Below the pieces are notes generated by a model, which searched no databases, was not told where the DNA came from, and saw nothing but the letters and a program-made list of their open reading frames with translations. Of a stretch of DNA of 64,000 nucleotides, positions 34,064 through 35,386 are shown one piece after another. The stretch lies in assembly GCA_002269645.1 (NCBI GenBank), contig NIVC01002665.1, positions 1 to 64,000 of the forward strand, read 5' to 3'. Both the position numbers and the translations under genes were made by a program. This DNA comes from Macrostomum lignano. Taxonomy: Eukaryota. Numbering within the stretch: the first letter of the stretch is position 1; each line of letters begins with the position of its first letter.

Positions 34064-35386
34064 CTAATAATATTTGCCATAAAACCGCATGGCGGATCCC
34101 ATGTTCTTCTTGCCGCGGAATCGCATGGCGGATCCCATGTTCTTCTTGCCGCGGAATCGCATGACAGATCCCATGTTCTTCTTGCCGCGGAATCGCATGG
34201 CAGATCCCATGTTCTTCTTGCCGCGGAATCGCATGGCAGATCCCATGTTCTTCTTGCCGCGGAATCGCATGGCGGATCCCATGTTCTTCTTGCCGCGGAA
34301 TCGCATGGCGGATCCCATGTTCTTCTTGCCGCGGAATCGCATGGCGGATCCCATGTTCTTCTTGCCGCGGAATCGCATGGCGGATCCCATGTTCTTCTTA
34401 CCCCTCCAGCGGAAAGGTGATCCCATGTGTCTCTTTCCGCGCAAGCGCAGAGCAGACCCCAAGTTCCTCTTCGACCAGTCGTCGTAGTCTTTGAACTCGT
34501 CCGACAGCAATTCGTCGCGATCTGGCATCAACTGGTACTCGGTCAGTGCATCGCCGTCGTCGAATTCGGCGGTCTGAATGAGTCGAAAAAGAATATTCTT
34601 AGACCTGTTACAGGCCAATGATAGCTAAGGACGGTAATATTCCTAATGAACACTACTAAGAGAGAAAGCAGATACGGAACGCTGATGACATTCCCACACA
34701 ATCAATTTGCTCCGCTCTCATTGTCCCGTTCAAGCACGGAGGAGAAACGCATTCAAGGGGATTCTGCACCTCTGTAGGCACAGCTACCCTGCCGCAACGT
34801 CTTCGGCGACATCGTCCCACAATCAAACAAGCGCGCCAATGCTGTACGCAGGCACGCACTCATACACGCTCACACAGGGTGTACAGCGGCCCTGACTTTC
34901 TAATCGTCAGGCATGTCTCTGTGCTTTTGAAGTTGGCCGTGTGGGTTTGAATCGTGCGACAACTCCCTGGGCCACACAAGCCTCAAATGAAAGTAGCCGC
35001 ACACGGAATCGAACCAGAGGTCTGTGACGCGAGAGTAAGACGCGCTTTACCGCTGAAATGCTCTGCCCCTTCCCAAAGCCCCCCCCCCCCCAAGCCAAAG
35101 CTGTTGCTAGGGGGCGCCATATACCTTTGCCAGCCATATTGGGGAGGGACCGCGCCCTCAGCCCTTGCCCCCTGGCTACGCCCCTGCAAAGGAGAGCGAA
35201 TGCACAATTGATGCGCGAATGTATTCAGACTGCGAATGCGAATAGAGCTCATTACAGCAGTCCCAGATCGCAGAAAGTCATTGTGTTTCTCACCTCGCCC
35301 AGGGCGACGCGCCCGCTCGAAGCCAGGAGCAGCGACAGGCAGCAGACAGCAAGCATGAGGCCGGTGGTCTCCAGTCTGCGGAGCAT
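34064..35386 (-). CDS. Neuropeptide prohormone, 200 aa: signal peptide, acidic spacer and 11 G-K[K/R]-flanked peptides
   Basis: join(complement 35386..35294, 34573..34064). Exon 1 MLRRLETTGLMLAVCCLSLLLASSGRVALGE|GTGAGA; phase-0 acceptor TCATTCAG. Predicted peptides: NLGSALRLR, HMGSPFRWR, 7x NMGSAMRFR, NMGSVMRFR and NMGSAMRFY, each followed by Gly and basic residue(s). Confidence 0.92.
34735..35069 (-). mobile_element. tRNA-derived SINE family B, in the neuropeptide intron
   Basis: Minus strand head GGGGCAGAGCATTTCAGCGGTAAAG...B-box GGTTCGATTCC; body matches 830-920 and 54878-55240. Confidence 0.7.
35079..35187. mobile_element. Truncated hAT-like MITE end
   Basis: Ends in CCTGGCTACGCCCCTG, resembling the CAG-starting GC-rich TIRs at 29.6 and 30.4 kb; partner TIR and TSD not found. 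Confidence 0.35.

What the first reader, a model, noticed from the sequence alone, without database searches (positions are those of the whole stretch)
34064..35386. Neuropeptide prohormone predicted to release Arg-amide (RFRamide) peptides, an FMRF-like core with an extra C-terminal Arg
Seen: a two-exon model (35386-35294, 34573-34064) with a signal peptide, an acidic spacer, a KR site and 11 units of 9-mer + G + K[K/R] (G-K only for the last unit). The units are NLGSALRLR, HMGSPFRWR, 7x NMGSAMRFR, NMGSVMRFR and NMGSAMRFY. The ORF track misses the signal exon. Established: convertase cleavage at dibasic sites, carboxypeptidase trimming and PAM/PHM amidation convert X-G-KK to X-amide. Inference: the products end in R-amide rather than the usual F/Y/W/L-amide. 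They carry MRF (as in FMRFamide) and GSxxRx (as in sNPF and molluscan LFRFamide-type peptides), but would not present a terminal RFamide epitope. I cannot assign the precursor to a named family, so it may be a new peptide-receptor system.
Basis: partly seen in the sequence, partly recalled or inferred. Interest (0 to 1): 0.85.

Follow-up and report, generated by a model that had tools for sequence, protein, structure and literature searches.

The report
Flatworm multi-copy Arg-amide neuropeptide precursor
This is a real gene of the flatworm Macrostomum lignano that looks like a neuropeptide precursor carrying 11 copies of a 9-residue peptide (mostly NMGSAMRFR, predicted to be amidated on the final Arg); it is uncharacterised and seen only in this species, but it is an ordinary kind of gene.

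Summary
On the minus strand, exon 35386-35294 (signal peptide) joins exon 34573-34064 through canonical GT/AG sites. The 200-aa product has an acidic spacer, a KR site and 11 units of 9-mer + G + K[K/R].

The window is Macrostomum lignano. A public partial gene model (100% identical) spans the predicted junction. Two paralogous M. lignano genes share a phase-0 intron just after the signal peptide, also following a Glu codon. Identical units in the two genes differ only by silent changes, so the peptide sequence is under purifying selection.

Arg-amide products follow from standard processing rules. Gly is kept in all 11 units with three different codons. In the paralogues that position is G, S, A or F, so amidation is not a fixed family feature.

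No relative was found outside M. lignano. The nearest foreign hit is a copepod FMRFamide-like precursor (xMGDSMRL-amide). The peptides fail the defining motifs of FMRFamide, sNPF and tachykinin-type families. Terminal Arg-amide is not unusual: protostome tachykinins and Hydra FRamides have it.

Verdict: a valid, lineage-restricted neuropeptide-type precursor and a new variant of a known kind. Receptor and function are unknown. The older flatworm peptide catalogues could not be read.

The parts
35984..36089 (-). 5' leader exon (non-coding). This is a minimum extent, and the 5' end is not defined.
   Evidence: The public partial model P0001 starts YGCS...FHFSCTG and then continues KEMLRR. That matches window sequence ending ...tgcacag|gtgcgag at 35984. 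The frame has no in-frame ATG after the upstream stop (ORF 35568-36164), so this exon is read as 5'UTR.
35395..35983 (-). 5'UTR intron containing a (CAGA)n microsatellite at 35594-35921
   Evidence: Donor gt at 35983-35982 and acceptor caacag| at 35396-35395. TRF finds period 4, 82 copies.
35294..35394 (-). First coding exon. The ATG is at 35386 and the exon encodes MLRRLETTGLMLAVCCLSLLLASSGRVALGE, which is the signal peptide.
   Evidence: The n-region has R3 and R4. The hydrophobic core runs about L10-L21, with 9-residue Kyte-Doolittle means up to 2.8. The c-region has small residues at -3/-1 (ASS|G or ALG|E). SignalP was not available, so this is a heuristic reading.
34574..35293 (-). Phase-0 intron of 720 nt between the signal-peptide exon and the peptide exon
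   Evidence: GAG|gtgaga ... cattcag|ACC. The junction ALGE|TAEF is present in P0001. In paralogue L001 a phase-0 intron (GAG|gtgagt ... tttcag|AGC) likewise follows a Glu codon just after the signal peptide.
34472..34573 (-). Acidic spacer (aa 32-65), followed by a KR cleavage site at 34466-34471
   Evidence: Spacer, measured from E31: 14 Asp+Glu against 2 Lys+Arg, pI about 4.05. The repeat region has pI about 12.
34076..34465 (-). Eleven peptide units, each a 9-mer + Gly + K[K/R] (the last has Gly + K only). The nearly identical tandem core is at 34086-34399.
   Evidence: The 9-mers lie at 34465-34439, 34429-34403, 34393-34367, then every 36 nt down to 34105-34079.
34064..34075 (-). C-terminal K-Y-Y and the TAG stop codon
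33841..33846 (-). Candidate AATAAA polyadenylation signal, about 220 nt after the stop codon
   Evidence: This is inferred from the sequence and no transcript end was seen.

Best explanation
This is a Macrostomum lignano gene for a secreted multi-copy peptide precursor of the neuropeptide type. It belongs to a small family seen so far only in this species.

The transcript has a non-coding leader exon, a signal-peptide exon and one exon carrying everything else. After signal-peptide removal, a PC2-type convertase is expected to cut after KR/KK. A carboxypeptidase then trims the basic residues, and PHM/PAL converts the exposed Gly to an amide. The predicted products are:
- 7x NMGSAMRFR-NH2
- 1x each of NMGSVMRFR-NH2, NLGSALRLR-NH2 and HMGSPFRWR-NH2
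- possibly NMGSAMRFY-NH2

The peptides carry an [ML]-R-[FLW]-R core. This resembles FMRFamide and sNPF (LRLRF-amide), but with Arg-amide as the C-terminus. They most likely act as neuromodulators or myomodulators through an as yet unknown receptor.

Shown here: the gene structure, the repeat anatomy, the species, the paralogues and purifying selection on the peptide. Inferred: the processing, the amidation, neuronal expression, the receptor and the function.
For: - Anatomy and coordinates.
- Species and junction: the only homologues are three M. lignano proteins. P0001 is 100% identical and spans ALGE|TAEF.
- Paralogues P0002 and P0003 (loci L001 and L002) have the same layout: signal peptide, a phase-0 intron after a Glu codon, a spacer, KR, then 7-9 units.
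- Selection: G3, S4, R7 and R9 of the unit are invariant or nearly so across 27 units while using 3-5 synonymous codons each. Identical NMGSAMRFRGKK units of the two genes differ at 5 nucleotides, all silent only in this frame.
- Amide donor: Gly is present in 11/11 units of this gene, encoded by GGA, GGT and GGC.
- Charge balance: the acidic spacer has pI 4.05 and the repeat region pI 12. This arrangement is typical of prohormones.
- Processing machinery: M. lignano has a nervous-system-expressed PC2 homologue whose knock-down is lethal (PMC4490696).
- Nearest foreign relative of the unit profile among 1.84 billion proteins: a copepod-type FMRFamide-like precursor with xMGDSMRL-GK[KR] units.
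Against: - No transcript reads, peptidomics or expression data could be examined. The junction rests on a public automated gene model and on paralogue structure.
- The signal peptide was judged by hydrophobicity and the -3/-1 rule only.
- In the paralogues the amide-donor position is G (6), S (4), A (4) or F (2) of 16 units. Many family members therefore cannot be amidated. R-x-K-K/R could simply be an extended convertase site with a free P3 residue.
- KK sites are generally cut less efficiently than KR/RR sites (my own knowledge).
- The last unit lacks a dibasic site.
- There are no homologues outside one species, so conservation across species is untested.
Confidence: 0.7

Rival explanations
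1. The gene is a diverged orthologue of a known bilaterian RFamide-type system (FMRFamide-type or sNPF/LFRFamide-type). Its C-terminus has changed, either by gaining an Arg before the Gly or by losing the terminal Phe. It still signals through the conserved receptor of that family. On this reading it is a member of a known family, not a new system.
For: - The core AMRF equals FMRF minus one residue.
- Unit 1...SALRLR, matches the sNPF LRLR(F) core. Paralogue units end ...SAMRLRF-KR, matching the sNPF-type RLRF motif (sNPF motifs from PMC6389622).
- The best foreign hit of the unit profile is a copepod FMRFamide-like precursor. That precursor in turn hits dipteran FMRFamide, PF01581.
Against: - The defining C-terminal RF/RW-amide is absent from every unit of this gene.
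- There is no Pfam FARP hit even at E<=10.
- The similarity rests on 5-7 residues of a short, basic motif, and its E-value is inflated by repetition.
- The RLRF units of the paralogues have no Gly, so they would not be amidated.
- No flatworm intermediates were found.
Confidence: 0.25
2. Amidation is incidental. The conserved element is NMGSAM-R-x-R, and R-x-K-K/R is an extended convertase site whose P3 residue is free to vary. The active products are then defined by their N-terminal and central residues, or are non-amidated in most family members. On this reading the Arg-amide of this gene has no special pharmacological meaning.
For: - Position 10 is G, S, A or F in the paralogues, while positions 1-9 and 11-12 stay almost invariant.
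- The two near-identical paralogue copies differ mainly at this position: L001 reads S,G,G,G,G,G,S,S,F and L002 reads A,A,A,A,S,G,F.
Against: - In this gene Gly is kept in all 11 units, including the three diverged ones, with three different codons.
- The S, A and F states trace to about three substitution events that were then amplified by tandem duplication. AGC and GCC are each one step from GGC, so the sample of independent events is small.
- If the peptide passes through PHM/PAL-containing granules, a C-terminal Gly will be amidated regardless.
Confidence: 0.2
3. It is not a neuropeptide. Instead it is a precursor of secreted cationic peptides made by a gland (defence, adhesive or seminal-fluid secretion), using the same convertase-type processing.
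For: The products are short and strongly basic (repeat region pI 12). The family is lineage-restricted, as many gland secretory proteins are. No expression data were available.
Against: Nine-residue peptides with a Gly amide donor, dibasic flanks, an acidic spacer and an FMRF/sNPF-like core match the neuropeptide pattern. The nearest database neighbour is a neuropeptide precursor.
Confidence: 0.05

Closest known systems
FMRFamide-related peptide (FaRP/FLP) precursors, including copepod MRL-amide FLP precursors (P0007; Tigriopus californicus 'FMRFamide-like neuropeptide 18')
   Same: Both have many tandem copies of a short peptide, each followed by Gly plus a dibasic site, together with a signal peptide and acidic spacers. 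The core xMGxxMR[FL] is shared with the copepod units (SMGDSMRL-GKK against NMGSAMRFR-GKK). AMRF is close to FMRF.
   Different: An extra Arg sits between the RF/RL and the Gly, so the C-terminus is Arg-amide rather than RF- or RL-amide. There is no Pfam FARP match. The similarity is confined to one short repeated motif.
Short neuropeptide F / molluscan LFRFamide peptides
   Same: Both are short peptides. The [ML]-R-[LF]-R core equals the LRLR of ...LRLRF-amide. Paralogue units end MRLRF. A G-S occurs upstream, as in GSLFRF-amide (motifs from PMC6389622; the molluscan sequence is from my own knowledge).
   Different: The defining M/T/L/F-R-F/W-amide terminus is missing. The RLRF units of the paralogues lack Gly. 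From my own knowledge, sNPF precursors usually carry few copies. No receptor evidence exists.
Hydra FRamides (IPTGTLIFR-amide, APGSLLFR-amide)
   Same: Eight of the 11 predicted products end in F-R-amide. APGSLLFR-amide and NMGSAMRFR-amide both have G-S at positions 3-4 (PMC7266959).
   Different: These are cnidarian peptides. The Hydra precursor carries a single copy of each peptide. No cnidarian protein was recovered by the exhaustive profile search. Convergence is the most likely explanation.
Protostome tachykinin-related peptides and natalisins
   Same: The C-terminus is Arg-amide and the precursors are multi-copy (PMC6880623).
   Different: The FX1GX2R-amide motif is not met. The last five residues here are A-M-R-F-R.
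Flatworm npp/spp prohormone catalogues (planarian set of Collins 2010; parasitic flatworm npp genes)
   Same: These are lineage-restricted multi-copy amidated peptide precursors, which are common in flatworms.
   Different: No RFRGK, RLRGK, MRFR, MRLR, RWRGK or GSAM string occurs in the planarian supplementary files. McVeigh 2009, McVeigh 2011 and McVeigh 2012 were requested but are not held; Koziol 2016 has no PMC id in the reference list seen and no look-up was attempted. A prior listing therefore cannot be excluded.

Membership tests
Multi-copy secretory peptide prohormone (generic) | N-terminal signal peptide | tested here: met
   R3 and R4, then a 12-residue hydrophobic core, then small residues at -3/-1. 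This is heuristic only, as SignalP was not available.
Multi-copy secretory peptide prohormone (generic) | Repeated peptides flanked by dibasic convertase sites | tested here: met
   KR precedes unit 1, and KR or KK follows units 1-10. Unit 11 has a single K.
Multi-copy secretory peptide prohormone (generic) | Gly amide donor directly before the basic site | tested here: met
   11/11 units in this gene, using codons GGA, GGT and GGC. Only 6/16 units in the paralogues have Gly.
Multi-copy secretory peptide prohormone (generic) | Peptide sequence under purifying selection | tested here: met
   Synonymous codon diversity sits at invariant residues. All 5 differences between identical units of the two genes are silent.
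Multi-copy secretory peptide prohormone (generic) | Spliced mRNA joining the signal exon to the peptide exon | tested here: inconclusive
   The public model P0001 contains ALGE|TAEF, and the paralogue has a phase-0 intron after a Glu codon just past its own signal peptide. No reads could be inspected. The exact-protein look-ups failed.
Multi-copy secretory peptide prohormone (generic) | Neuronal or endocrine expression, and detection of the mature peptides | not testable with these tools
   This needs in situ hybridisation and LC-MS/MS.
FMRFamide-related peptides (Pfam FARP PF01581) | Peptides ending in R-F-amide, i.e. RF-G-basic in the precursor | tested here: not met
   All units read R-[FLW]-R-G or RFY-G.
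FMRFamide-related peptides (Pfam FARP PF01581) | Match to the family profile | tested here: not met
   hmmscan against Pfam at E<=10 lists no FARP hit.
sNPF / LFRFamide | C-terminal M/T/L/F-R-F/W-amide (PMC6389622) | tested here: not met
   The terminus is R-amide. The paralogue RLRF units lack Gly.
sNPF / LFRFamide | Activation of an sNPF-type receptor | not testable with these tools
   This needs a receptor assay.
Protostome tachykinin-related peptides | C-terminal F-X1-G-X2-R-amide (PMC6880623) | tested here: not met
   The last five residues are AMRFR, ALRLR or PFRWR.
Hydra FRamide family | C-terminal F-R-amide | tested here: met
   Eight of 11 units end RFR-G. Motif only.
Hydra FRamide family | Precursor homology | tested here: not met
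   The exhaustive profile search returned no cnidarian protein.

The most novel reading that the evidence does not exclude
The Macrostomum 'RFR-amide / RLR-x' genes define a new ligand family. It would have arisen from an FMRFamide- or sNPF-type ancestor by a one-residue change at the C-terminus, with its own co-evolved receptor. The paralogues, which switch the amide-donor Gly to Ser, Ala or Phe while freezing the rest of the peptide, would capture a family in the act of changing its C-terminal pharmacophore. That would make the co-evolution of peptide C-termini and receptors directly testable in a tractable flatworm.
Probability: 0.2. Interest if true: 0.6.

Novelty: new variant of a known kind. 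Interest (0 to 1): 0.4.

Why it matters
If the products are confirmed, M. lignano has a set of abundant FMRF-like peptides that classical anti-RFamide antisera would not detect. Maps of peptidergic neurons in this model flatworm would then be incomplete.

The gene pair also offers a natural comparison. This gene has Gly in every unit. The paralogues have G, S, A or F at that position on an otherwise frozen peptide. Together they allow a test of how much a C-terminal amide matters for receptor activation.

Beyond that it is one more lineage-restricted flatworm neuropeptide precursor. Many of those are already known, so the result is useful for annotation rather than surprising.

Tried and rejected
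- Literature: full-text searches for RFRamide, MRFRamide, the peptide strings and the paralogue locus tags found nothing relevant. 'FRamide' hits were Hydra and cubozoan peptides or C. elegans usage. The planarian prohormone supplement has no matching strings. McVeigh 2009, 2011 and 2012 are not held.
- Pfam on the 200-aa model gave only sub-threshold noise: DUF7952 at 15.5 bits against a cut-off of 33.4, and Eclosion and bZIP at E>1.
- Exhaustive profile search: hits P0004-P0006 and P0008-P0010 are low-complexity or unrelated repeat proteins such as IGSALRLRWSP or TTAHRLRAQ repeats. I rejected them as chance.
- Metagenome scan with the unit profile found a single locus, L003, which is a bacterial contig with no repeat structure. 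I rejected it.
- A search with paralogue P0002, including its non-repeat C-terminal half, found only P0002 and P0003.
- The signal-peptide and spacer regions of this gene and the paralogue show no detectable similarity. Homology therefore rests on the units and on comparable intron placement just after the signal peptide.
- Synteny check between the window and L001/L002: the shared segments outside the repeat array are dispersed repeats, not collinear genes.
- The antisense ORF 34089-34487 is rejected as coding because paralogue differences change 2 residues per unit in that frame, against 0 in the sense frame.
- The tRNA-like box in the intron was not called by ARAGORN or Rfam.

Full report
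**1. Observation**

- The ATG is at 35386. A 93-nt exon encodes MLRRLETTGLMLAVCCLSLLLASSGRVALGE and ends at a canonical donor (GAG|gtgaga).
- A 720-nt intron follows, then a canonical acceptor (cattcag|ACC) at 34573.
- The second exon is 510 nt and ends in TAG at 34066-34064. The intron is phase 0 and the product is 200 aa.
- After the signal sequence comes a 35-residue spacer with 14 acidic and 2 basic residues (pI 4.05), then a KR site, then 11 units of 12 residues.
- The units are NLGSALRLR-GKR, HMGSPFRWR-GKK, seven NMGSAMRFR-GKK, one NMGSVMRFR-GKK and a terminal NMGSAMRFY-GK-YY.

The array is not a chance feature. Tandem Repeats Finder reports a 36-nt period, 8.7 copies and 98% matches. 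A six-frame motif scan of the whole window finds the unit only here.

**2. Which strand and frame is real**

A tandem repeat without stop codons is open in several frames, and there is an antisense ORF of 132 aa at 34089-34487. The frame question is settled by comparison with a paralogue. An identical unit, NMGSAMRFRGKK, in the window gene and in locus L001 differs at five nucleotides. All five are silent in the proposed frame. They change 2-5 residues per unit in every other frame. With 7.7 synonymous sites of 36, the chance of this is about 4e-4.

**3. Organism and relatives**

The 200-aa model finds only three proteins among 5.8 billion, and all are from the free-living flatworm Macrostomum lignano.
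- P0001 is a 126-aa partial UniRef model that is 100% identical. It reads ...RVALGETAEFDD..., so it spans the predicted junction.
- P0001 also begins with 37 residues (YGCS...FHFSCTG, then K and E) that map to window 36089-35984 and to the 8 nt before the ATG.
- There is therefore an upstream leader exon. It is spliced (G|gtgcgag ... caacag|GCAAAGAGATG) across an intron that contains the (CAGA)n microsatellite at 35594-35921. That frame has no ATG, so the leader is 5'UTR and 35386 is the start.
- P0001 stops at ...SPFRWR, at the entrance to the near-identical repeats.
- Its automatic name, 'Pro-FMRFamide-related neuropeptide FF', is not evidence of family.

P0002 and P0003 are two copies of one paralogous gene, called 'hypothetical protein' at NCBI. 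They lie in loci L001 and L002 from assembly GCA_002269645.1. Their layout matches the window gene: a signal peptide, a phase-0 intron after a Glu codon at the end of the signal sequence (GAG|gtgagt ... tttcag|AGC), a spacer, KR, then 7-9 units of the same 12-residue design. They also have a longer C-terminal part with further dibasic sites.

The two genes are about 82% identical in the repeat DNA and share nothing else except dispersed repeats.

**4. Selection on the unit, and the Gly question**

A codon table was built over all 27 units: 11 from this gene, 9 from L001 and 7 from L002.
- S4 and K11 are invariant. G3, R7 and R9 each have one exception in 27.
- G3, S4, R7 and R9 are each encoded by 3-5 different synonymous codons. 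This pattern indicates purifying selection on the peptide.
- Position 10, the amide donor, is Gly in all 11 units of this gene. It uses GGA in unit 1, GGT in unit 2 and GGC in the rest, so its conservation is not only a by-product of recent unit duplication.
- In the paralogue the same position reads S,G,G,G,G,G,S,S,F in L001 and A,A,A,A,S,G,F in L002, while the rest of the unit stays fixed.
- AGC and GCC are each one step from GGC, so Gly is the parsimonious ancestral state. The Ala units of L002 are identical at the DNA level, which points to one event amplified by duplication. The number of independent losses is therefore about three.

Two readings remain. In the first, the paralogue is shifting to non-amidated or C-terminally extended peptides. 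In the second, the residue is a free P3 position in an R-x-K-K/R convertase site, and amidation in this gene is incidental. I consider the first somewhat more likely for this gene, but the point is not settled.

**5. Mechanism (inferred)**

The steps below follow established prohormone processing and are my own knowledge. Signal peptidase acts first. A PC2-type enzyme then cleaves after KR/KK. A carboxypeptidase E-type enzyme removes the Lys/Arg residues. PHM and PAL then convert X-Gly to X-amide.

The products would be NMGSAMRFR-NH2 (x7), NMGSVMRFR-NH2, NLGSALRLR-NH2 and HMGSPFRWR-NH2.

M. lignano has a PC2 homologue that is expressed in the nervous system and whose knock-down is lethal (PMC4490696), so the machinery exists in this animal.

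The last unit is followed by a single Lys and Tyr-Tyr. It has no basic residue at P4 or P6, so release of NMGSAMRFY-NH2 is uncertain.

The receptor and the function are unknown. By analogy with flatworm FLPs, a neuromuscular or neuromodulatory role through a GPCR is the default guess.

**6. Comparison with known families**

Pfam finds nothing, including no FARP match at E<=10.

An exhaustive HMMER search used a three-unit profile (A1) against 1.84 billion representatives. It returned nine proteins. Two are the M. lignano proteins. Six are unrelated low-complexity repeats. The remaining one, P0007, is a genuine neuropeptide precursor from a JGI sample with units xMGDSMRL-GK[KR].

P0007's relatives are copepod proteins: Tigriopus 'FMRFamide-like neuropeptide 18' and Lepeophtheirus. 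More distantly it hits dipteran FMRFamide carrying PF01581. The nearest known thing is therefore an FMRFamide-type precursor. The resemblance is one short motif (MG-x-x-MR-[FL]), and its E-value is inflated by repetition.

Motif comparisons:
- The core [ML]-R-[LF]-R equals the LRLR of sNPF's ...LRLRF-amide. Paralogue units end MRLRF, but without Gly.
- The defining sNPF terminus M/T/L/F-R-F/W-amide (PMC6389622) is absent.
- The RF-amide terminus of FaRPs is absent.
- The FX1GX2R-amide of protostome tachykinins (PMC6880623) is absent.
- Eight products would end in FR-amide, like the Hydra FRamides. APGSLLFR-amide even shares the G-S (PMC7266959). However, no cnidarian precursor was recovered, so I treat this as convergence.

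The gene therefore works like an FLP/sNPF-type multi-copy precursor, but it fails every membership test that could be run.

**7. Novelty and limits**

What is particular here is an FMRF/sNPF-like core capped by Arg-amide, in a family detected only in M. lignano. A sister gene varies exactly the amide-donor residue.

I found no description of these peptides in the searchable literature. However, the two main flatworm neuropeptide catalogues were unavailable. One of them used M. lignano ESTs (my own recollection). I put roughly one chance in three on a prior listing.

**8. Verdict**

This is a valid, well-formed gene. It is a lineage-restricted neuropeptide-type precursor whose predicted main product is NMGSAMRFR-NH2. 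It is a new variant of a known kind, of moderate interest (0.4). The decisive tests are transcript evidence, peptidomics at the masses given, localisation together with pc2, and receptor pairing.

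Noticed in passing
window 35594-35921: A long (CAGA)n microsatellite (period 4, about 82 copies, 91% matches) lies inside the 5'UTR intron of the gene. It creates several long spurious ORFs on both strands.
   Followed up: partly
window 35005-35015, within the intron 34574-35293; also 34824-34916: The coding intron holds a tRNA-like box-B motif (GGTTCGATTCC) and a segment 77% identical to L002 6791-6875. 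This suggests a tRNA-derived SINE or another dispersed repeat. ARAGORN and Rfam call nothing there.
   Followed up: partly
window 54880-55237 against L002 6683-7040; window 23328-23634 and 53434-53697 against L001/L002: Dispersed repeats are shared between the window and the paralogue loci, up to 94.7% identical. One of them forms the N-terminal part of the long ORF 54320-55252, whose C-terminal part has a DIOX_N domain. These are repeats, not synteny.
   Followed up: partly
window 34089-34487 (+): An antisense ORF of 132 aa (MADPMFFLPRNR repeats) is produced by the tandem array. It is not supported as coding.
   Followed up: yes
window 23789-26342 (-), 41644-42723 (+), 54320-55252 (-), 60988-63318 (-): The neighbouring ORFs carry ordinary eukaryotic domains: MIF4G + MA3, CCDC34-like (below the Pfam cut-off), a 2OG-dioxygenase N-terminal domain, and the tubulin-tyrosine ligase family. 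Exon structures were not worked out.
   Followed up: no
window 4551-7331: This region is open in three overlapping minus-strand frames (ORFs of 840-885 aa) with no Pfam hit. Its start (4551-4749) matches tandem repeats in L001/L002 at about 70%. It probably holds satellite or low-complexity DNA.
   Followed up: no
L001 10001-10872 and L002 10001-10806: The paralogous precursor has an extra C-terminal part with further candidate peptides between dibasic sites, for example HVGTPWRWSVPNY, HLGAAVRFGGE and WRYSWPNWYQRQ-G-KR (a possible Gln-amide). The deposited P0003 sequence has one fewer RAKK unit than the locus DNA shows.
   Followed up: partly
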